A DNA stretch of 64,000 nucleotides, from NCBI GenBank assembly GCA_964252035.1, contig OZ176209.1. One strand, written 5' to 3'. Under the pieces are notes generated by a model, which was not told the DNA's origin, did not search any database, and worked only from the letters and a program-made list of their open reading frames with translations. A program made the translations under genes and the position numbers. Origin of the DNA: Podarcis erhardii (Eukaryota). The stretch's first letter is position 1, and each line of letters opens with the position of its first letter. Below are positions 371-62,751 of the stretch, piece by piece.

Positions 371-1740
371 TTGATAAACCCTGATAAAATTTCCTAATCA
401 AAGCATGTCTCACATTCACAGTGCAGCTTTATTAAGGCCCATATAACAATAAAGCCAAGATTGCTATCAGTCATTGTGCAGTGATAAGTGTCAGTACTTT
501 AGATTGCCCAACTGATAAAAAGCATTCCTATTAGCATTTACTATGAGACTTGTCATTAAGCAATTGACCTTTTAAGATCAAATATATTTTGCACTCCTCA
601 CTCACTCTGGATATTTTAGTGGGGTGATCAAATTTATTGCTCACATTTAAGGAGATCTGAGGGGCAATAACAGCCTAGCCTACCTCACAGAGCTGTTGTG
701 ACAGGGAATTTAGATTAACCTAGGTATACCACTTTGGGCTCATTTGAGGGGGGTGTAATATAATTACAAAATAAAAGTAATAGGGACCCCACAAAAATCA
801 TAGTGGGGGGTGAATTCAAAGGGGATAGGAGAGTCCAACTTCCCTTCCCCCAGAAACACCTGTTGGGTAGAAGGATTGCAGTTCCTTGTGTTAGTGGCAC
901 CTGCTTTTCTTAGCCAACACAACTCCTCATCCCTCCTCCTTTGTGCTGCCCATCGCCCCCAGTGATGTTTCATAGCCAGTTTGAGGGGAAGGGGAAGTTA
1001 TTCATGGCCAGAGCTAGTTTGAGAAGGAGAAGCTAGGGGGTCATTTTGACTCCCAAATATTTCACCTATTTACTTCCTATGCTTCCATGTCCCTGTTTTT
1101 TGGTTCCTAGAACATCTGCATGGAGACTTGGATAGAAATAGATAACCGAGCTACTTTTGGATTGGTGCACATCATCAGCCTAGTTCCATAGCTCTTGTCA
1201 CTACACTACCAGAACAATGGCAGCAGCCTAGCAAAGAGGCTCATAGGGTTGGGTCATAAATCTACCGTCAGCATCTGAAGCTAACAATTCATGTGACCTT
1301 GACTTTTCCCCAGTAAAGAAACAAACTCCTATGTGATCCATAAATGAAAGGCAGAGCAAGTTTCAGAGTCCACTACTCATACAATAACAGGTAGAGTGTG
1401 CCTGATGCTGGATGCTTCTACCATTGCTGCAACTACCTGCTCTCTCTCTCTCAAAATCATTCCCATTTGCTGTTTCTCCCCTACCAAGATTGCCATTTCT
1501 CTTTCCTCTAGAACCTAGAAAAATCAGCCATGCCCCATGATCTTTTCCTCTCTTAATGCAATCAGCTACTGACCCCCACTGAATTGGTCATTTACCTTTT
1601 CCCTTCACCAACACTTCCAACATTGGTGTTATTTCTTCTGGAAGTCTTACCTTCTTCTACACACCTTCTCCTGCAGGTGTTGTTGACCTTCTATTTTCCA
1701 AATTCTGCAATTTATCTCGTGCCCCATGGGTTTCTGGGTA

Positions 1741-1998
1741 CAGTGGTACCTCGGGTTAAGAACTTAATTCGTTCTGGAGGTCCGTTCTTAACCTGAAACT
1801 GTTCTTAACCTGAGGTACCACTTTAGCTAATGGGGCCTCCCACTGCCACTGTGAGGCCACCATGTGATTTCTGTTCTCATCCTGAGGTAAAGTTCTTAAC
1901 CTGAGGTACTATTTCCTGGTTAGCAGAGTCTGTAACCTGAAGCATTTGTAACCTGAAGCGTCTGTAACCTGAAGCGTCTGTAACCCGAGGTACCACTG
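1741..1998. mobile_element. Tc1/mariner (Tigger-like) MITE
   Basis: Perfect TIR cagtggtacctcgggtta / taacccgaggtaccactg, flanked by TA on both sides, with internal tandem taacctgaag units. Confidence 0.88.
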
Positions 1999-2948
1999 TA
2001 TTAACCACGAACCACAGTTTGATGTATCAATTACTCAGTTGGGGGCGGTGCTGCAAAACACAGGGGTTAATGCTGAAAATCACTGCAAAACAACTACAAA
2101 ACTTTGGCACAGGTTTGGAGGGGATCCCAATTTTGGGGTTCGTAGTTAATAACTGGAATTTACAATGGGGAATCTGTGGAGAACAAAAAGGTTAATTCCT
2201 CCTCCTCCAGTCTTGATATAATTACCCACCCACCCCCACTGCACATGTGCACACACACACACTGCTGCTTTTAAAATAAATTATAATAGAAAGCTAGAAA
2301 TTTCCAACATCCTGGTTCGTTTGGTTCTTGGAGCAGCCAATCCTAGTCCAACAGGAAAATGGGTGGTATGGAAGTATTTTCATATTAAAAAGGATTAATA
2401 AATCTGCATTACATTATCATTGGTGGAAACAAAGTATGTTGTTTCAAAAGCATGCGTGAATTCAAAAACTAGACAAAAAGTTATATTTATGTTCTAATTA
2501 TGCTGTTCCAATATTTTCTTGTGTTATCGGGAAGATAAGGAAAATTTCAGAACACCATATGCTGAATAATATAAACACTTCAAGGAAGAGGATGCAAAAA
2601 TGTTATGAGTAATGAAGACCAGAGCATATTTCCTTGCCAGGATTAAGTCTTATCATAATCTAAAACATGGAAAATATTTAGTTTTATTATATTATTCTAG
2701 TCTTTGTAAGAAAAGAGAAACATCATTTGAAACAAGTATTTATAAGACTCGCTGCACAGTCATTTTAAATATCTGAGGTGCACTCTGATCTCTTCTGTAC
2801 TGGGCTAACTGCTATGCCATCTTTGTCTTGTTTAGCTTTGCAAAACTGGGCGGAGCTTACTCCAATTCTTATTTTACAGAAGACAAATTGAGGGTGAGCA
2901 ATAGATACTTGCCAAAGACCACTCAAGATCAAGGCAAAAAGGATAGAT

Positions 2949-6284: not shown

Positions 6285-6745
6285 CTGGAGGAATGATATA
6301 GGACAAGTTACTCGCAACAGGTAGTAAGAATCCAAAATAAAGCCAGAAGTTAGAGAAATGAAGTGACTGTTATCCATTCTATTTTCTAACCTGAATTTTG
6401 AAAGAATTTATTTTTCTCTGATACTATGGATTACCAAAATACACAGCAGAACTTGCTTTATTTCTTAGAAATATGGATTGCTATAATGGCAGAGAAGCAT
6501 TTGGTGCAGGTCCAGCATTAGATTTGAGTGGGGCTTTCAGCACAGGACTTGTGAGACGTCCCCAGAGTGCTGGTATAGGCCTTCTTAGCATTGTGGCAGT
6601 TCTGTGGCCATGAGTGACTCACTCCTTCCCTGGACCAGAATTCCTGGTGTCCCTGGGACTATTGGAATGTGAGCTGAGTGGTTGCTTGGGCAGTTATCAT
6701 GTGATATGCTCCAAAATTCAACCCTGGTGTCCTTATTGGGAAATA

Positions 6746-6984
6746 CAGTGGTACCTCTGGTTACGAACTTAATTCATTCCAGAGGTCTGTTCTTAACCTG
6801 AAACCGTTCTTAACCTGAGGTACTTTAGCTTATGGGGCCTCCCGCTGCTGCCGTGCCACTACCATGCGATTTCTGTTCTCATCCTGAGGTAAAGTTCTTA
6901 ACCTGAGATACTACTTCTGCATTAGTGGAGTCTGTAACCTGAAGTGTTTGTAACCCGAGGTGTTTGTAACCCGAGGTACCACTA
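6746..6984. mobile_element. Tigger-like MITE, same family as 1741-1998
   Basis: TA-cagtggtacctc...gaggtaccacta-TA. Internal sequence is closely similar to the 1741 copy. Confidence 0.85.
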
Positions 6985-7543
6985 TATAACATGGCAACCA
7001 CCTGACCCTGCTCCTAGCGGTACCAGGCCCATGCAGGTTGAGAAATGGGAGGCTGTGACATGACCTGGGACAGGGGCAAGGGGCAGCAGCAATGCTGGCA
7101 CAGGCTCCTAGAGCGTAGATGTCAGTCCTTTGCTGGGGTGTGTGGACCTCAGCAGCTGGGCCTGATCCCATGGAAGTCAAGTCTTTCTTGACATGTCCTG
7201 TTGTAACCTTTTATCAGTGATAATTTATCAGTCTATCACTATCTATTTATCAGTTTATCACTATCCATATTACTATTGGGCTATTTTAACAGAACACATG
7301 AGTAAAAATCAGAGAAAAGCATATTTCCTTTATTCAGGCTTTTTCAACAACCAGCACGTCAAGTATTCACTAATGCTAAATTACACCTACTGAAATGAAG
7401 GCTCAGCCCTTAAACATGTCAATAACATTTTTCATAATGACTGGGGATGGTTTGGACTGGGCAAGGGTATTTATCTGTTATAGTAATAATTCACTGCAAT
7501 GCATTTGAACATATTTCCAGGGAAAACAATCTAAACATCTTAC

Positions 7544-8016: not shown

Positions 8017-8160
8017 AAAAAGGTAAAGGGACCCCTGACCATTAGGTCCAGTCGTGACCGACTCTGGGGTTGCGGCGCTCATCTCGCTTTATTGGCCGAG
8101 GGAGCCCGGCGTACAGCTTCCGGGTCATGTGGCCAGCATGACTAAGCCGTGAACCAGAGC
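8017..8160 (-). mobile_element. Sauria SINE, 5'-truncated
   Basis: Reverse complement of the SINE 3' half (aaaggtaaagggacccctgaccattaggtccagtcgtg...), nearly identical to the copies at 20729 and 29136. Confidence 0.85.
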
Positions 8161-13973: not shown

Positions 13974-14666
13974 CAGGGCTGGATTACCATTAAGCAAAAT
14001 AAGCACATGCTGAGGGCATCAAGGGAAAGGGGGCACCACATAAATTTTCCATTGCCAGATTTTTAACATTAACTATCACAAATTGCCCAGCTGAGTGTTC
14101 ATTTTCTCATTTGAAGTATATTAATAATCCCAACAGGACAACTATGCAACAAGGCAGGCTGGATGCCTTATCTCAACTAAGCATAGAAGCAGATGCGTTA
14201 CATAACATTACAGTGGTACCTCGGGTTACATACGCTTCAGGTTACAGACTCCACTAACCCAGAAATAGTGCTTCAGGTTAAGAACTTTGCTTCAGGATGA
14301 GAACAGAAATTGTGCTCTGGTGGCACGGCAGCAGCGGGAGGCCCCATTAGCTAAAGTGGTGCTTCAGGTTAAGAACAGTTTCAGGTTAAGAACAGACCTC
14401 CGGAACGAATTAAGTACTTAACCTGAGGTAGCACTGTAGTTTTGAGAATCTGATTTGCTGTTAGAAAAGTAGGATAATTTTTTCAGGTATAAAGTGGAAA
14501 TATACAAAAATAAACATTTTCAATTTTACTGTAGGTTTTGTTTCAGTTTGAAAAATAAAATGTTATTTTATGGTTTATTATTGTTTATATTTTGAATTAT
14601 ATATATATGGGGGGCACCAAAATCTTTTAAGTGTTTAGAACCTCTAAAGGTCTTCATCCAGCCCTG
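13974..14666. mobile_element. Non-autonomous hAT element containing a nested Tigger-like MITE
   Basis: TIR cagggctggat / atccagccctg and TSD ggtttggc / ggtttggt (7/8). Confidence 0.78.
14211..14436. mobile_element. Tigger-like MITE, same family in opposite orientation, nested in a hAT element
   Basis: TA-cagtggtacctcgggtta...gaggtagcactg-TA. Interior is the reverse complement of the 1741 copy. Confidence 0.85.
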
Positions 14667-20046: not shown

Positions 20047-20728
20047 CTGAAGAGTAAAAGTAAAAAGATGTTCTTAGGACAAGCTGTTGATGTGTAGTTG
20101 AAGTAATATGCTGATTAGCTGCTACAATTACATTCCCATGTTAGCTGTTCCCAATTAATTGTAACCGGAGCATGTGAAAGAAAGCAGCTGGGGGTTTTGC
20201 ATAAGGCCTTGAAGATTTCAGAGAAATACTGGGGCAGCTGTCAGGTTCGTCTCAGGTCCATTCACACATCATGGTAACTATGGATGAAAAACATCCAACC
20301 CATAGGCCTAATTAGACTTCCCCATTTTGCCTGTGCAGCTGTTTTGGCCAAGCCATTCCCACTTGCTCTACACCTGATATCATTTGTGACATCACATGAG
20401 AGAAAGGTAAAGGCAGGGCTTGGATCAAAGGCTGTGCTGATTCCCAGCATTTCCCAAGTGGATGGCAATCAGCTGATGGTTGGGAACTTGGGAAGTGTGT
20501 GTAAGAGACTTTGCAAACCTACTTTGGAAATAAAAAATGGTCTGCTTTTAAAAAGAACAGGTCCGTCCCCCCCACTCCCAAAGGAGATTTTATGCCTCAG
20601 AAAAAAACTAAGTCTGTATTAATTTATTTGAAACATTTCTTTCAAATAAAGAAACATGCATTCTTTCCTGCATTTCATTTAATAAATTCAAGAGGGCTAA
20701 CAGCAGTGTGTGTGTGTGTGTATGCATA

Positions 20729-21069
20729 AAGGTAAAGGGTAAAGGGACCCCTGACCATTAGGTCCAGTCGTGGCCAACTCTGGGGTTGCGGTGCTCATCT
20801 TGCTTTATTGGCCGAGGGAGCCGGCGTACAGTTTACAGGTCATGTCGCCAGCATGACTAAGCCGCTTCTGGCAAAACCAGAGCAGCACACGGAAACACCG
20901 TTTACCTTCCCTATTTATCTACTCGCACTTTGTGCTTTCGAACTGCTAGGTTGGCAGGAGCAGGGACCGAGCAACAGGAGCTCACCCCGTCACGGGGATT
21001 TGAACTGCCGACCTTCTGATAAGCAAGCCCTAGGCTCTGTGGTTTAACCCACAGTGCCACCCGCGTCCC
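20729..21069 (-). mobile_element. Sauria SINE, full length
   Basis: tRNA-like head gggacgcgggtggcactgtgggttaaacc at the right end and an (ACCTTT)n tail at the left. Possible TSD tatgcata. Confidence 0.9.
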
Positions 21070-27003: not shown

Positions 27004-27064
27004 GCCTATATTTATATGGAGGTCTGGAGGGGCACCAGATTTTGTCTTTACTCATGGTGCCATA

Positions 27065-27148
27065 AAGTGGTACCTCTGGTTACAAACTTAATTCATTCTG
27101 GAGGTCCGTTCTTAACCTTTAAACTGTTCTTAACCCGAGTTACCACTG
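27065..27148. mobile_element. Internally deleted Tigger-like MITE (84 bp)
   Basis: TA-aagtggtacctc...gagttaccactg-TA. Interior matches the first part of the 1741/6746 family. Confidence 0.75.
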
Positions 27149-29135: not shown

Positions 29136-29485
29136 GGGACACGGGTGGCACTGTGGGTTAAACCACAGAGCCTAGGACTTGCCGATCAGAAGGTCAGTGG
29201 TTCAAATCCCTGCGACGGGGTGAGCTCCCGTTACTCAGTCCCTGCTCCTGCCAACCTAGCAGTTCGAAAGCACGTCAAAGTGCAAGTAGATAAATAGGTA
29301 CCGCTCTGGCGGGAAGGTAAACGGCGTTTCCATTTGCTGCTCTGGCCAGAAGCGGCTTAGTCATGTTGGCCACATGACCTGGAAGCTGTACGCCGGCTCC
29401 CTCAGCCAATAAAGCAAGATGAGCGCCGCAACCCCAGTCGGTCACAACTGGACCTAATGGTCAGGGGTCCCTTTACGTTTACCTT
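29136..29485 (+). mobile_element. Sauria SINE, full length
   Basis: Head gggacacgggtggcactgtggg with box B-like ggttcaaatccc and tail ctttacgtttacctt. Flanking direct repeat atacacatga at 29122-29131 and 29486-29495. Confidence 0.9.
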
Positions 29486-32400
29486 ATACACATGAATACA
29501 TAGGTCTATGAGGATCACAAGTCACTGAAAACTTTCCTTCAAGTTGCTTTTGTCCAGCTCACATATATTTACTTAGAAGCAAGTTTAAATAATACAAAAC
29601 TGAACATATATACCAAGCCCCTATGAAAGTGAATATGATGTTGTGACCCCAAGTATGCTTACTCATCCATTTAACTTGAGATTCATTTTTAATGGGGGGA
29701 GGGGGCCAAAAGTTCTTCAGTGGCCTATGCTACACATAAATGAAGTTTGGCTGTTAATATGACATGAAACTACATTTGACTTAAGAACTTTTGGTATTAT
29801 TATGTTCCATTTTACAACCTCACACTTGTTATGCTATAGTGACATCTTATGGTCATTTTATTCCATTTAGTTTCCATGTATATTGGATGTGTGTTTTTTG
29901 GTTCATTTGTTTTCTAAATTCATTGGACCTATGATGTACCTTATTCTTTGCTGTAGTTTCAGCTTAATACAAATATTACTATATCATTTCAAGAGTGCTG
30001 AAATTTATGGTACTCAGAAATGCTGCAGTAACAATGTATATGCAGCGAAAACACCACCACAATGATGAAATATTAGGTACATTTTTTAGTCCTTTAGATT
30101 GCTGTGGGAAACATTGAATTTTAACCATTTGGAAGGCATTACACTCTCACCTTAAAAGGTGAAAATATGAAAAGTTTATTATTTCAATAAAGCAACATCA
30201 TTCAAGATTTGAAAACTACACAGTTATTCATTCACAGTACAAAGTTGTAGGAATTTCTTGTAACCATCACTGTACATTTTACATATTTTTAAGTATTACC
30301 AGTTTTAAAAGTTGATATAAAGAATAGATTTATTTTGAAAAGCAGCAAGGTCCAATAAAACCAAAATAGAGTATCATGCTCCAACCATTCTGCTGATCAC
30401 AAACCACAGCAACACTAGAGTAATATCATTACTTTACACACACAAAATTGAATGCCTTACAGTCTAAACATAAAATTTGCCACAACTAAGGAAGGACTGT
30501 ACAATTAGACAGACATTAAATATTTTGAATCAGGCCTGAGTTCAATACATATAAAGCCATTTGAATATACAACTTCCAACTTGAGAGATATATACAACAC
30601 TTAAAATTGCCTGAAATTTTAGTATTTCAAAGAGAACCTCTTTTTACAAATTTCTGTACAAAGGGAGCCATTGAAGATTTAGACTGGAAGCCAAAATTCA
30701 AAATCAGAACCTGCTTGGAGTAATCGTAGCTTTCCCGTCAATTTCTATTTGAATGCAGATTGTCACAACAAATCTGGTGCATCCAAGTTCAGGTTAATTA
30801 AAATTGCAATCATATATTGTAACAGTCAGTATATATTACAATGCCAAAAAGGCAGACCCAGGTAAATTGTTCTTTTAAAAAATATATCTGGAACTGCACA
30901 AACCCGGCAAATTTCAGAAGATATCCACAAGTCAATTTTGAAACATCATGTAACCAGGAGCGAGAGAGCAGTTGTTTATTTAGAGTGAAATATCCACCTC
31001 ATACCAATTAGGCTAGATCGATGAAACTATAGTGTACAAAGATAGAAAAGTATTATTTCTATGTGAAACATACATGTGGAAAACTGCAAATCAATTGTCA
31101 CAAGTTTACACTGAAATAATCCTCAACATTTTCTAATGGACAAACGACAATATTGCTTACTTGTTATGTTTTACTGTTATGAGAGCCAAAAGCCTTAATA
31201 TAGTTGAGGGGAAAGCAAGGCTACTGAAATATTAGCCTGCCTGTGAATTTCAGTGATTCGTGTTTTCCAAGAATTAAGACTTCTACCATAATATTGCTTT
31301 ACAGACCCAGCTAAACTGATGTCAGGCTATAACTTTCATTCCTTCTGTGTATATTGGGTGTATTGGGTGTATATTGGGTTATATCTAATTGGGGATCTGC
31401 TGACACAATGACACACACACACACACCATCTGCTCTGGAGTGTCCCCAACTCTCTGCAGCAAATTTTGAGACTGTGCAGGAAGCTGGAAGGGACAGGAGA
31501 GGAAGTTCCATTGTGCAAATGAAACCCCAGTGTTAGTAATTTTAATAAGGGAATATCATGAAAGTAACTGAATATATTAAGTGTTTTTTCATTAAATGAA
31601 CTCCTAACTTCCTTTTGTTAGGAACTACTCCCATTTGAAAGAGGGAGGTTACTTCTAGTTACATCCCTCCCTTTCTATTTGTATAAATAAACATTTCAGC
31701 TCATGTTGAGTAAACAGGACTTGATCCCTGTTAAATACAAACGGGGCATAAATAAGCAGGTTTATTATCTGCTGCATCTGCTTTCCAAATTACATAATAA
31801 TTTTTGTATTTCAAAGAATCTGAGAAGCTGAAAATAGGATTTTCAGCTTGCTTTACTAATTAAGATCATACTTCAAGGTATTACAATTCATAAGAGTACA
31901 ATAAATAAGAATAGCATTTGTATTCAAGCATTTACAATCATTGTGTCTTTCATACTCCTTCACCCTATATGTTTTTTCAACCATAACACTCTTGCTAGTG
32001 ACACCTGTCAAGTGATCTAAAGGTGTTGACATATCATGTGTAGATTTCCCGTCATTATGAAAAGGTGAGAGTGCTGGTGTCACTAGCATTATCCAAACAT
32101 CCTATTGAGCACATAGCAGCTCCTTTGTTTAGCTCACGGTAAAGGAAAAAGTCACCAGCTATAAAAGCATAAAAACAGGTCAGGGAGATTTTCATAAATG
32201 AACTCTACAAGGAATAGTCTATCTCCAAATTCACATCTTCCTGTGAAAATGGCAGCTTCGTGGAATTTGGAGAAGTTGAACAAACATCTCTGCTAGCAAA
32301 TTGATGAAAAAAATCCCTTCCTGACTCCAAGAATACATAAATTATCTTGAAAAAGAACTTTACTAGAGATTTATTTGATAATCACAGAAAGAACTATTCA

Positions 32401-57876: not shown

Positions 57877-57994
57877 TTCTAGACAACTGAGTTTTTGTCC
57901 TTGATATGGGAACTTTAGAAGCAAAACAAAAAGTCTAACTATGCAACATGTTCTACAGTTAATTTTGGTAGTTACATTGTTTAAATAAGAATAC

Positions 57995-58166
57995 CTTCCG
58001 GCAAGTTCTGAATTGAATAAACAATGGCTTCAGGAATTCCCATTTCTTGAATACCAATATCTGAAGGATGGAAGAGTATCTCTGGAACAGCAAATCGCTC
58101 ATTTGTAAGACGAAGTATTTGTTCACCAGTTTTGTATTTTCCACTTAACACCATTTCTTCCCTTGG
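57995..58166 (-). CDS. ACTR6: ACTR6 internal exon
   Basis: tag|CCA...G|gtatt, 172 nt. Translates PREEMVLSGKYKTGEQILRLTNERFAVPEILFHPSDIGIQEMGIPEAIVYSIQNLPE(E). Confidence 0.95.
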
Positions 58167-58862
58167 CTAAATCAAACAGATGTGAATTAACACACATGTA
58201 ATAATGAAACCAGCTTTTAATATCAACATTAATCAGTCACCTTATTTGCATGATTTTTCCCATGTAGTAGCTGGGATCCAAAACCTGTATGGGAATCTGA
58301 AACTTGTATATTTCTTCCATACAATTATACCTAGCTATATCAGCACATAATAACATAGAAATTGCAGCCAACATGCTATGACTGAACAGTAAGAGGATGA
58401 ATCAACAAACGAAAAATGGCAATTCATTTCACATCCCCCCTCTCTCAATAGAGACTTTATTTTTTTTCTAACTAGGTTGCATAAGTGTTGGAGAACCTTT
58501 CATCCTCCAGATGTGTTAATTACCTTGTTTTAAATTTGCATTTTACATCTGACTTCCTCTAATAATGTTTCCTTTTGAAACATTTAATATAATTTTTTAT
58601 TATCTTTGTTGCATTAAATGTGCATTCTGTAGTTGACCTCCTTTGTAATGTTTTAGTTTCAAAATCTTAAAAGGCAATATTTTAATTTCCTGTTAATTAT
58701 GCTGCTTTGAATATATACTTTATATTGGAATTTCTTCTGTAATGTCTTCTTCTGGATTGTTTTATTTGATGTAGGTTGTAAATGCTTTGAGATCTTTTTC
58801 TTAAAAATATATGTAAGTATAGAAATGAAATGAAATGAAGAAGACTGATTTTATGCAATTAC

Positions 58863-58941
58863 CTTACAAAACCCTTTTTTTATTGTGCTGAAGTCTGGTA
58901 AAACATAGTCCAACATTACTGTATTTTCTTCCCCCTTCAAT
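58863..58941 (-). CDS. ACTR6: ACTR6 internal exon
   Basis: cag|A...AAG|gtaat, 79 nt. Translates (K)LKGEENTVMLDYVLPDFSTIKKGFCK. Confidence 0.95.
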
Positions 58942-59041
58942 CTGAAACAAGTTGGAATTCAGAATACATCCTAAAGTTAATGATTCTTCAGAGCCACAAA
59001 AAAAAAAAAAATTCATTGTAAATAAATAATTAACAATTTAC

Positions 59042-60656
59042 TTTATCAAACCTTTATTAGGCATTATGGAAATAATGGAATTATAGACCGATAAGCCTTC
59101 TATCAGTGATAGGGAAAATCTACGCTAAGCACCTCTTATCTAAACTCCTTACCTGGATGAAAAATCTAAATTTACCAGGGAAAGAACAAATAGGTTTCTC
59201 CAAAGGTTGCTCCACACTAGACCACTGTCTTATACTTATGCATCTGGTTGAAAAATACAGATCCCAAAGGCAATCTAAGATATACGCTGCTTTTGTAGAT
59301 TTTCGTGGTGCATTCGACTCAATTGACCGCCCAAAGTTGTGGAGGAAACTCGCAGAATTAAAAATTGATCAGCGCCTATTGATTCTAATGCAAAATCTAC
59401 ACTCTTCCAATACCTGTCAAGTCAAACTTAACATCAAAGGTCACCTTTCATCAGACATCCCAATCTCGAAAGGGGTAAAACAAGGGTGTATTCTTGCCCC
59501 CTTTCTATTTAATTTATTTTTATCAGACTTGCCAGATTACCTTCAAAAAATAGAATCACATGCCCCTAAACTTAATCAGAAACCAGTTCCTCTCTTACTA
59601 TATGCAGACGATGCTGTCCTACTATCCTTAACGAGCTTGGGTCTGAAACGTCTTATATCTTCACTGATCCTCTATTGCGAATGTAACAAACTCTCTATAA
59701 ACTATGAGAAGACAAAAATTTTGGTCTTCTCGAATGGTTGGAAATTAGAGAAATGGAAAATAAGAGGGCAAGAAATCCAACAAGTGAAAATCTATAGGTA
59801 TCTGGGAATCTTATTCCAGAGCAATTTAGGGTGGGCAACCCATCGCACAAATGCCATAAAACAGGCAAAGTGCATCTCATCAGCAGTTGCCCGTTTTCAT
59901 TATCAGAAAGGTAATCAATTTATTCCTGCGGCAAATCAGATATTTCAAACAAAAGTGCAATCCCAGATATTTTATGGAATCCCGCTATGGGTCCAAGCAT
60001 ATAACAATGATTTAAAAAAGATTCACTCTAGCTTTCTGAGACGTATTCTTGGACTCCCAGCTACGATCAAATATGAAACAATGTGTGCAGAAATAGGCAT
60101 ACACACAATGGAATATTGGGCATGGTCCACCTCAATAAAGTATTGGTTACGCTGCCACTTTCGCTGCCCTCCATCAAGTCTGCTCGCTGATTTGCTCAAA
60201 GACTCCTATAAATCAAGATGGTATCAGCACCTCGAAAAAAAGATTGAATCTTTAGGCATCGAGCTGGAGCCCCTGTACAATTCTAATGAGCAGTATATTT
60301 CCCATAATATCCTAACTAGACTAAAGGATGTCGAGAGACAAAATATTATGGCAGCTGTAAACAAAATTTGCTCCCCCATATTCTATGAATTAAATATCTT
60401 AGATAGCAGAGCCAATTACGTCACTAAACTAATAATCCCAGCCCAACGTAGGGCTTTTATGCTGGCCCGTTTGAATGTTTTTCCCTCAGCATTTGTCAGG
60501 GGAAGATATCAAAACATTCCTAGAAACAAGAGACTCTGCAGATGCTCTATGAATGTCCCGGACACTGCAGAGCATATTCTCCTTCATTGCCCATTGTACA
60601 GTACGCTCCGTCAACGCGTGCTGTCCCCTCTTTTGGGTGGTCTGGAACCGCAGCAA
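59042..60656 (+). mobile_element. 5'-truncated non-LTR retrotransposon (RTE/RTEX-type reverse transcriptase) with an inverted tail and 14-bp TSD, in an ACTR6 intron
   Basis: Uninterrupted frame from NYRPISLLSVIGK (59079) through AFVDFRGAFDSI, GVKQGCILAPFLFNLF, LLYADD and a C-terminal LCRC...EHILLHCPLY motif. The direct repeat aattaacaatttac occurs at 59028-59041 and 60657-60670. Clade assignment is inferred from recalled motifs. Confidence 0.88.
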
Positions 60657-61542
60657 AATTAACAATTTACCCTAATATGGGTCTAAGTCCAACTTTCTCA
60701 AATGTGGAGACCTCTCAAAAGGAGGCTTTGATGATAACTAAATAAGAAAGCTGCATAGGATAACCTCCTTTTGACTTTTAGTCAGTAAGACAGCTCACCA
60801 CCATGTAAAGCTATTTGGGGTATTCAGTGCATATAGATGTTGAACTTAATAGCGGGACAATCACACCTTGCATGGGGCTTATGTTCTGGGGATGGCAGGA
60901 ATATGCAAAACTGTGTAAATTCAAACCACCCCCACATAAGTATCCTTGCCAAGCGAGCCTTACCATCATCCTCCACACCCCGGGAAGACAGCTTTTAAGC
61001 TCTGCCATGCTTACCAGGCAAGTCCCGCACACTGCATAGGCTTTGGGATGCTCTTGCAAGTTCATGTGGGACTGTCTGAGTTCCTGTGAGATCTTGCAAC
61101 AACACGCCAGAACCTGTGTGCACTCTGCGTTGCATGCAATTTCAACTACATAAGTTAATTGCATATGTAGAGCTTGAAAATGATTTGGAACATTGCAGAT
61201 GCTTCAGTAACAGAATCCAGACTATAAACCCAAGTCTGGCTGAAATGAGACCTCAAAGATCATTATCCCTGTTTCCAGATATGGGGACTTGGGTCACTCC
61301 ATACATGCTCAAAGGCAGTCTTCATAACAACATGTTTCAGAGCTAACCCTTAATGAACCCAAGCTTAAATTTAAGCCCCAGACACAAGACGCTTTCAGTA
61401 AAGGAATTTGATATTTAATGTATTCATAGACCACTGCCAACAGAGTGGTGGTTTTTTCATCACAAGGCAATACATAATAAATTCTTCAGGCCATAGACAA
61501 AATTACCATTAACTATATTTAGCAGTATAAAAAAACCCATAC

Positions 61543-61641
61543 TTGGCAGTCTCCATATCCTTGAAAAAGTCTTGGGAAACATAACATACATCTTCTTTCA
61601 CTTGGTTAATCACATGGGTTTCATCCATAACATGGAGTTGC
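61543..61641 (-). CDS. ACTR6: ACTR6 internal exon
   Basis: tag|G...AA|gtatg, 99 nt. Translates (R)QLHVMDETHVINQVKEDVCYVSQDFFKDMETA(K). Confidence 0.95.
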
Positions 61642-62751
61642 CTATAATTTTTAAAGAAAATAATGCTACTTTATCTTGTTTTCATTGCTGGTCTGTTATG
61701 AGTATTCAATATGAGTATTTATTGAAGCTTAAATGTTATAGTAAAGCTGTTAGATTAATTGTGGAAAACTCACTTAAGCCTTTAATCCTCTGTGGAGTAG
61801 GGCATGCTATTAAACCAAAGAACAGTAAGAGGAGGATGAACGTTCTTAACACTGCACTTCTTTGAGTTCTCATTAAGTTGTGATTAGGAACTAATCTGTT
61901 AAACCAGATGAAGTTCATGGTTTTTAGTAGAAAAAGTTAATAATATTCTCATACCACCCTTTCTATACAAGAGGAACAAAATTACATATATAGGAAAGGT
62001 ACTGTTTGATGGGGCTTTTTAAAAAAAGATTATACATATTGTAATTGTTCAGGAATCCCACCTTTGCAGAAGACATTCAGAATTGGCACATGAGTAGTAT
62101 CTAACACTAAACAGCCCTCTAAATAGAACCAGCAAGACCTAAGGATGCAGGGGGATCTTCAGAATAGAAATGTTCTCACTACTGTTGAGATGGGGGATAG
62201 GGGATGGGAAACAAGTGACCGTGAAATCTAGGTTGAGCAGCTTAACTCACTGTGAGGAACCCAGCTGGTTTTGCCCATCTGTATATTCCCAATGAACTTT
62301 CTAGGGTGTAGCTTATGAAAGTTTGTGTATACAAAAAGAGGGAACCCTCAAGTTCATGGACCTTGCCCCATTATAGTCTACTCATGTGGCCTAGCATACC
62401 CACAGATTCACTCAGATTCTCCATGGAACCAGTGGCATTTGGAAACAACCAACAAGATATGCCAGTAAATTATGGTGCAGTTTCATTGCCATACCTAAAA
62501 CAATTCACGGAATAATTTTACTGCTCATTTCCTGGAGTGTTCCATCTATTTTTCCAATTTAACTTTTGCGGCAAAAAAACTAATTTTAAGTATCATTGCA
62601 TACCTTGCACCATAATCTAGGCAAAGTAAGCCTTCAGCAAACCTTGAGTTCAAAAGTTAGCTTTCTCTTTTTGTCCTATAAAATAAAATAAACTATATTT
62701 TTATTACCGTGAACCAGCTAAGATTGTAATAACTTCTAGTTAGTGTTTTAC

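What the first reader, a model, noticed from the sequence alone, without database searches (positions are those of the whole stretch)
59028..60670. Apparently young RTE/RTEX-type LINE with twin-priming-style inversion and a perfect 14-bp TSD
Seen: the 14-mer aattaacaatttac flanks the insert on both sides (59028-59041 and 60657-60670). Inside the left copy is a ~37-nt segment that on the minus strand reads ...ataatgcctAATAAAggtttgataaa and runs into the TSD like a LINE 3' tail. It is joined directly to a plus-strand RT frame that starts mid-domain (NYRPISLL, 59079) and has no stop for over 500 codons. That frame is cut off before its natural end, and its TAA comes from the TSD itself. Established: this layout (short 3' end in one orientation, inverted 5'-truncated body whose 3'-most point abuts the other TSD, deletion at the junction) is the twin-priming signature described for mammalian L1. 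Inference: a non-L1 LINE of a reptile used twin priming, which to my knowledge is seldom documented. The intact ORF suggests a recent, possibly polymorphic insertion from an active family.
Basis: partly seen in the sequence, partly recalled or inferred. Interest (0 to 1): 0.75.

Follow-up and report, generated by a model that had tools for sequence, protein, structure and literature searches.

The report
Young half-flipped lizard LINE insertion
A recent insertion in a wall-lizard ACTR6 intron, still absent from four other sequenced lizards, carries 1.58 kb of a compact non-L1 jumping gene facing one way and a 34-base tail piece facing the other inside one 14-base target duplication, the "twin-priming" footprint known from human L1, so it is a clean but fairly ordinary example in a new element family.

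Summary
The 14-mer occurs only at 59028-59041 and 60657-60670. In all four runs laid on the region, a contig at single-copy depth joins 59027 to 60657 and shares exactly those 14 bases. This is the empty site, so 59042-60656 went in as one event.

Refined anatomy:
- Minus-sense arm 59042-59075: 34 nt, not 37.
- One unassigned T at 59076.
- Plus-sense RT body 59077-60656.

The body belongs to a young multi-copy family. Full-length members have 1081-1099-aa ORFs (P0149 cluster, including Podarcis muralis proteins) and are 95-97% identical to the window ORF. They carry an APE endonuclease from residue 1, then RT, then a CxCx9Hx4C motif. Their ORF ends 31 codons after the window copy's cut.

The arm is part of another multi-copy sequence that continues beyond 59075 in other contigs. 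It ends on the TSD with no poly(A).

Twin priming by a non-L1 LINE is the best reading, at about 0.65. Two points remain unproven. The RTE/RTEX label is also open (RTE-like build; Vingi not excluded).

This scan has already reported twin-priming footprints elsewhere in this genome (L1, BovB, Sauria SINE), so novelty is modest.

The parts
59028..59041 (.). Left copy of the 14-bp target-site duplication
   Evidence: Exact 14-mer, one of only two copies in the window. Empty-site contigs in four runs carry a single copy (joint 59027->60657, 'both' = 14).
59042..59075 (-). 34-nt arm, sense on the minus strand. It contains AATAAA (59058->59053), ends ...GATAAA directly on the TSD with no poly(A), and is the putative 3' terminus of the LINE RNA.
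   Evidence: It is absent from the empty allele, so it was inserted with the body. In three runs, one contig per run matches up to 59075 and then continues with different, AT-rich sequence, so the arm is a truncated piece of a longer multi-copy sequence (loose end 'behind 59075'). No other copy exists in the window.
59076..59076 (.). Single T at the arm/body joint that fits neither source (filler or later substitution)
   Evidence: Both source sequences carry A here: the arm continues AACC..., and the body family reads ...CCAA|GG (loose ends at 59075 and 59077).
59077..60656 (+). 1580-nt LINE body, truncated at both ends: reverse transcriptase (NYRPISLL 59079-59102, YADD 59601-59612) plus C-terminal domain with CxCx9Hx4C (60537-60590)
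   Evidence: RVT_1 9e-31. It is 94.7-97.0% identical, without gaps, to residues 543-1068 of full-length 1099-aa family ORFs. Family contigs continue in frame upstream of 59077 (FKNGDPKEPR|NYRP) and downstream of 60656 (GKCVGLYLSD), matching P0149. High-depth contigs match with 0-1 differences over 150-314 nt (table 8).
60657..60670 (.). Right copy of the 14-bp TSD; it supplies the last sense codon (AAT) and the TAA stop of the open frame

Best explanation

Inferred sequence of events:
- The element's endonuclease made nicks staggered by 14 bp.
- The plus-strand 3' end (...ATTTAC) primed reverse transcription at the RNA's 3' end, but this cDNA reached only 34 nt (59042-59075).
- The minus-strand 3' end (...GTTAATT) annealed inside the same RNA, at least 130 nt from its 3' end, just after the codons ...EPQQ. 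It primed a second cDNA that ran 1580 nt towards the RNA 5' end and stopped in the RT finger region.
- The two cDNA ends were joined with one extra T and no microhomology.

Shown: single event, TSD, empty site, orientation and limits of both arms, identity and youth of the body's family. Inferred: the order of nicks, and that the short arm is the same family's 3' end.
For: - TSD and empty site: four runs with four different organism labels each hold a contig at single-copy depth that joins 59027 to 60657 and shares the 14 nt.
- Flank differences from the window are about 0.5% in X15 and 2-3% in X1, X20 and X13 (table 8). The insertion is therefore younger than the splits from the three more divergent runs, and it is missing from an allele in the closest one.
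- The body is a truncated copy of a family with intact 1081-1099-aa ORFs. Family contigs run on in frame past both body ends.
- Summed contig depth over the body is 60-130 times the flank depth in three runs and several hundred times in X20. Pieces of 150-314 nt carry 0-1 differences. The tool warns that depth is not a copy number.
- The arm is inserted DNA, not host DNA, because it is absent from the empty allele. It is truncated at 59075 relative to a longer multi-copy sequence and abuts the TSD with no poly(A), as expected for the tail of a LINE that does not need poly(A).
- The geometry matches twin priming: the arm's 3' end lies on one TSD and the body's 3'-most point on the other.
- The 14-bp TSD lies in the 10-20-bp range that goes with 5' inversions (PMC4245944).
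Against: - No DNA of a full-length family copy could be read, so the arm is not proven to be this family's 3' end.
- My attempt to link the arm to the family through the ORF's C-terminus failed. The family ORF ends ...FLAAVLQGAG or ...FLVAVLQGAG, not in the peptide that the 64 nt (arm plus its upstream continuation) would encode.
- The gap between the arms is at least 96 nt and of unknown size.
- There is no clear microhomology at either priming site.
- No run shows the filled junctions independently of the assembly.
Confidence: 0.65

Rival explanations
1. Twin priming on two different RNAs: the 1.58-kb body comes from the P0149-family RNA, but the 34-nt arm is the 3' end of another retroelement or cellular RNA that was primed at the other nick.
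For: The arm's family identity is unproven. The arm contains AATAAA 12 nt before its end, like a polyadenylated transcript. Earlier notes of this scan describe chimeric two-RNA events (L1 or another LINE with 7SK) in this same genome (not tested here).
Against: There is no poly(A) between the arm and the TSD. The arm belongs to a multi-copy sequence, and my rough back-calculation of its depth is of the order expected for the 3' end of the same family (the tool warns against ranking parts by depth). A stringent, tail-less LINE should start on its own 3' end.
Confidence: 0.2
2. Not twin priming: an endonuclease-independent or break-repair capture of two LINE cDNA or DNA fragments, or a conventional internally primed insertion followed by a local rearrangement.
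For: Neither junction shows a canonical L1-type TTTT/A nick site or clear microhomology. One filler base lies at the arm/body joint.
Against: A precise 14-bp duplication with a clean empty site is the mark of staggered endonuclease nicks. Break-repair captures usually lack TSDs or delete target DNA. A later rearrangement would not leave both arms exactly inside one TSD.
Confidence: 0.08
3. Assembly artefact or chance repeat: the insert is a mis-join and the 14-mers match by accident.
For: None of the four runs shows the filled junctions. All four show the empty site.
Against: Contigs show presence, not absence. An artefact would not duplicate exactly the 14 nt that are single-copy in the empty allele. 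About one chance 14-mer pair at this spacing is expected in the whole window, and it would not fall exactly at both ends of a LINE fragment.
Confidence: 0.02

Closest known systems
Twin-primed (5'-inverted) human L1 insertions (Ostertag & Kazazian 2001; 18-22% of human L1 insertions, PMC12016303)
   Same: One TSD of 10-20 bp; two cDNAs in opposite orientation; the 3'-end arm on one TSD and the internally primed arm's 3'-most point on the other; a gap between the arms in element coordinates.
   Different: The element is not L1 and has no poly(A) tail. The direct arm is only 34 nt. One filler base lies at the joint instead of microhomology. The nick sites are not TTTT/A.
Single 5'-inverted Nimb-2_DR insert in chicken DT40 cells (PMC4245944)
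   Same: It is the only non-L1 5' inversion reported in that study of more than 200 de novo inserts, and it is the only one I found in the held literature. It shows that the event is possible outside L1.
   Different: That case was a cell-culture event of a fish I-superfamily element. This one is a natural germline insertion in a lizard, from a different family.
RTE clade (RTE-1 of C. elegans, SR2/SR3 of Schistosoma; PMC1291365)
   Same: Single ORF of about 1000-1100 aa with an N-terminal APE and a central RT. The element is compact: one family ORF of 3300 nt sits on a 3410-nt contig. Distant relatives end in simple repeats a few bases after the stop codon.
   Different: The family carries a CxCx9Hx4C motif and about 60 further residues after the RT. 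RTE-type metagenome relatives match only the RT part at 25-32% identity. No reference phylogeny was run.
Vingi-1_Acar of Anolis (compact single-ORF APE LINE without RNase H; PMC13708176)
   Same: A squamate host, a single ORF with APE and RT, and no RNase H domain. Anolis proteins 40-41% identical to the window ORF exist.
   Different: No Vingi reference sequence was available, so kinship is untested.
Earlier findings of this scan in the same genome (L1, BovB, Sauria SINE 5' inversions)
   Same: Same footprint, same genome.
   Different: A different LINE family and a different place. Here an empty allele was found in four runs.

Membership tests
Twin-primed LINE insertion | Both arms lie inside one target-site duplication, and an empty site with a single copy of it exists | tested here: met
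   exact 14-bp TSD; contigs in four runs join 59027 to 60657 with 14 nt shared.
Twin-primed LINE insertion | Two arms in opposite orientation; the internally primed arm's 3'-most point abuts one TSD and the other arm's end abuts the other TSD | tested here: met
   body 59077-60656 on the plus strand ends on the right TSD; arm 59075->59042 on the minus strand ends on the left TSD.
Twin-primed LINE insertion | The short arm is the 3' terminus of the same element RNA | tested here: inconclusive
   The arm is multi-copy, truncated at 59075 and tail-less. No full-length copy's DNA could be read. The coding-overlap idea was refuted.
RTE clade | Single ORF of about 1000-1100 aa with N-terminal APE endonuclease and RT | tested here: met
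   P0149 and P0262: 1099 aa with an APE-like N-terminus from residue 1 (my reading of the sequence; Pfam flags Exo_endo_phos domains in P0149), then RT. The feature is as described in PMC1291365.
RTE clade | Unusually short 3' UTR made of AT-rich short repeats | tested here: inconclusive
   One full ORF (3300 nt) lies on a 3410-nt contig, so at most 110 nt there is non-coding. The arm is AT-rich and ends ATAAA, but no repeat units are visible.
RTE clade | RT groups with RTE references in a phylogeny | not testable with these tools
   No labelled reference RT sequences were obtainable. Source names, PDB and Atlas do not discriminate between clades.
Vingi clade | Single-ORF APE LINE lacking RNase H | tested here: met
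   No RNase H domain was found in the window ORF or in relatives. The feature is as described in PMC13708176.
Vingi clade | RT is sister to Ingi in a phylogeny | not testable with these tools
   No Vingi or Ingi reference sequences were available.
L1 clade | Poly(A) tail at the 3' end | tested here: not met
   The arm ends ...GATAAA directly on the TSD. This holds only if the arm is the element's 3' end.
L1 clade | RT specifically closest to L1 ORF2p | tested here: not met
   Human ORF2p scores 4e-17 against R2 proteins at 6e-16, over the RT core only. There is no match beyond the RT.

The most novel reading that the evidence does not exclude
Twin priming may be a regular outcome for this active, compact lizard LINE family, and more widely for APE-type LINEs that make staggered nicks of at least 10 bp. 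If so, 5' inversion is not a peculiarity of L1 in human cells, as the cell-culture data suggested (PMC4245944). The family, with intact 1099-aa ORFs, would then be a natural system for studying second-strand priming.
Probability: 0.3. Interest if true: 0.55.

Novelty: new member of a known kind. Interest (0 to 1): 0.4.

Why it matters
Outside L1, 5' inversions are almost undocumented. The one systematic cell-culture study found them only for human L1 in human cells, plus a single Nimb-2_DR insert (PMC4245944). A natural, recent insertion with a proven empty site, from a non-L1 family whose members still hold intact 1099-aa ORFs, adds to several similar cases this scan has found in the same genome. 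Together they suggest that second-strand priming is a general property of APE-type LINEs with long staggered nicks. The family itself is a compact single-ORF element of the kind now being tried as gene-writing tools (Vingi-1, RTE-1; PMC13708176). The insertion is also a ready polymorphic marker in an ACTR6 intron.

Tried and rejected
- An exact scan of metagenome contigs for the arm found nothing. A viral-contig scan with alignment A1 found nothing. The metagenome scan with A1 gave only relatives at 25-42% best-segment identity.
- The search of earlier findings found nothing by place near the finding or by sequence.
- The first word search missed the family because its length filter excludes proteins over 924 aa. 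A second search with a long relative plus local BLAST found it.
- Idea rejected: that the 64 nt (30 loose letters plus the arm) encode the ORF's C-terminus. A column-score test did not separate the frames, and the real family C-terminus is different.
- Clade assignment from source names, PDB hits, the ESM Atlas, Pfam and the papers searched did not discriminate between RTE, RTEX and Vingi. Two papers that might have described the clades were not held.
- My motif-based impressions conflict and rest on memory only: the RT motifs look RTE-like and the APE motifs look I/Jockey-like. I did not use them.

Full report
**What is in the sequence**

The 14-mer AATTAACAATTTAC lies at 59028-59041 and 60657-60670 and nowhere else in the window, even with one mismatch allowed. 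In the whole 64 kb there are only two pairs of identical 14-mers 1-2.5 kb apart. Block-shuffled sequence gives 0.7 such pairs on average, so a chance pair falling exactly at both ends of a LINE fragment is very unlikely. Between the two copies, the plus strand carries an open frame of 528 codons (59076-60659) that matches RVT_1 at 9e-31. Its last sense codon and its TAA stop come from the right-hand 14-mer.

**Empty site**

I laid Logan contigs of four public runs, which carry four different coded organism labels, on 58000-61700.
- In every run, one contig at single-copy depth (16, 14, 120 and 8) joins 59027 directly to 60657, with 14 letters fitting both sides. This is the pre-insertion allele with a single copy of the 14-mer.
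- Everything from 59042 to 60656, including the short left-hand segment, was therefore inserted in one event. It is not host DNA.
- The flanks of these contigs differ from the window by about 0.5% in X15 and by 2-3% in X1, X20 and X13 (table 8).
- The insertion is therefore absent from three more distant lizards and from at least one allele of the closest one.
- Contigs show presence, not absence, so I cannot say whether any of these samples also carries the filled allele. None of the rows shown bridges a filled junction.

**Limits of the two arms**

Loose ends fix the borders.
- Contigs of the RT family match from 59077 onwards. Before that point they read in frame FKNGDPKEPR, followed by NYRPISLL.
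- The same contigs match up to 60656 and then continue in frame as GKCVGLYLSD.
- In three runs, one contig per run matches the left segment up to 59075 and then continues with a different AT-rich sequence.
- The insert therefore consists of a 34-nt arm (59042-59075, sense on the minus strand), one T at 59076 that fits neither source (both sources carry A there), and a 1580-nt body (59077-60656, sense on the plus strand).
- On the minus strand the arm reads ...AATAAAGGTTTGATAAA and runs straight into the TSD with no poly(A).

**The family**

The first protein search found nothing closer than 54% identity. That search only sees proteins up to 1.75 times the query length. A second search with a long relative, followed by local BLAST, found the family itself.
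- It is a 90%-identity cluster of 13 proteins. Seven are ORFs of 1081 or 1099 aa from Logan contigs. Six are Podarcis muralis UniProt entries of 644-1081 aa.
- These proteins are 94.7-97.0% identical to the window ORF over about 526 residues. No gaps were needed.
- They begin with what I read as an APE endonuclease from residue 1. Pfam flags Exo_endo_phos domains in P0149.
- They continue through the RT to a CxCx9Hx4C motif and end ...EPQQG(K/E)CVG..LSD.DQRVTAGVAEFL.AVLQGAG.
- The window copy is therefore cut 31 codons before the natural stop, and it lacks the first 542 residues.
- One member sits on a contig of only 3410 nt. At most 110 nt of that contig is non-coding, so the element is compact.
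- Over the body, summed contig depth is 60-130 times that of the flanks in three runs and several hundred times in X20. Pieces of 150-314 nt match with 0-1 differences. The tool warns that depth is not a copy number, so I read this only as "multi-copy and young".
- More distant relatives exist in Anolis, Naja and Rhineura at roughly 40-45% identity to the window ORF or to its relative P0121.

**Mechanism**

The layout is that of twin priming.
- On the plus strand, the target 3' end ...ATTTAC is followed at once by the complement of the arm. This is what priming at an RNA 3' end would produce.
- On the minus strand, the target 3' end ...GTTAATT is followed at once by the complement of the body, starting at an internal point of the RNA and running towards its 5' end.
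- The two cDNAs meet at 59075/59077 with one extra base.
- The 14-bp TSD lies within the 10-20-bp range that Yamaguchi et al. found to accompany 5' inversions (PMC4245944).
- In element coordinates, at least 96 nt (31 codons plus the stop) is missing between the arms, plus whatever part of the 3' UTR lies upstream of the arm. If the 3' UTR is no longer than the 110 nt allowed by the 3410-nt contig, the gap would be about 126-172 nt. That figure is an inference.
- Neither priming site shows clear microhomology. The partial pairing I could draw for the internal site needs G:T wobble pairs, and I give it no weight.

**What is not shown**

The central gap is the identity of the arm. It is inserted DNA and multi-copy. 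It is truncated at its inner end and tail-less at its outer end. All of this fits the 3' terminus of a LINE that does not use poly(A).
- I tested whether the arm plus its 30-nt upstream continuation might encode the ORF's C-terminus. The score did not separate reading frames, and the true C-terminus of the family is different. That link failed.
- A two-RNA event, of the kind this scan has noted for 7SK chimeras in this genome, therefore remains a live rival.

**Clade**

The RT is not specifically L1-like. Human ORF2p and R2 proteins score alike, and only over the RT core.
- The build is that described for RTE (PMC1291365): one 1099-aa ORF that starts with the endonuclease, in a very compact element.
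- Distant metagenome relatives at 25-37% identity are single ORFs of 1035-1135 aa. Several of these ORFs end within about 40 nt of the contig end, with (ATG)n or (GTGA)n repeats at or near that end.
- The family also has a Cys/His motif and a further tail after the RT.
- Vingi is a compact single-ORF squamate LINE without RNase H (PMC13708176) and fits the domain list equally well.
- Without labelled reference sequences I could not run the phylogeny that would decide.

**Novelty**

In the papers I could search, twin priming is described for L1 and the RNAs it mobilises. The one systematic look at other LINEs found a single inverted Nimb-2_DR insert and none for ZfL2-1.
- This scan has already reported the same footprint elsewhere in this genome for L1, BovB and a Sauria SINE. 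I did not check those notes.
- This case adds a further, different LINE family and direct evidence of an empty allele. It is a clean new member of a known kind rather than a new mechanism.

Noticed in passing
window 57984-58154 (minus strand): An exon of ACTR6: 57 aa match residues 255-308 of human actin-related protein 6 at 2e-27. The LINE insertion lies about 870 nt away, apparently in an ACTR6 intron. The AATAAA of the short arm is in the sense orientation of the gene.
   Followed up: partly
window 58496-58870: A multi-copy repeat just left of the insertion. Summed contig depth is 30-330 times the flank depth in all four runs, with many internal joints and diverse loose ends at 58614, 58654 and 58663. 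It was not identified.
   Followed up: no
window 59077-60656, run X20 (organism F): Summed depth over the LINE body is 280-770 times the flank depth in X20, against 60-130 times in most bins of the other three runs. This may be a lineage-specific burst of the family. Depth from contigs is not a copy number.
   Followed up: no
window 1739-2001, 6741-6987, 14209-14441, 27063-27142: Several copies, in both orientations, of a SINE-like repeat that begins TACAGTGGTACCTCGGGTTA and has 16-nt tandem units near one end. It looks like a Sauria SINE; that name is from memory.
   Followed up: no
window 8018-8149, 20715-20880, 29337-29500: A second short repeat family (AAAGGTAAAGGGACCCCTGACC...), with copies 78-96% alike in both orientations.
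   Followed up: no
loci L004, L013, L019, L040 (metagenome contigs): Distant relatives with single ORFs of 1035-1128 aa whose stop codon lies 10-38 nt from the contig end, with (ATG)n, (GTGA)n or a 14-nt repeat at or near that end. This is the RTE-type minimal 3' UTR.
   Followed up: partly
method: The length window of the search for homologous proteins (0.55-1.75 times the query length) hid the 1081-1099-aa full-length family members from a search with the 528-aa fragment. The best visible hit was 54% identical, although relatives at 95-97% identity exist.
   Followed up: yes
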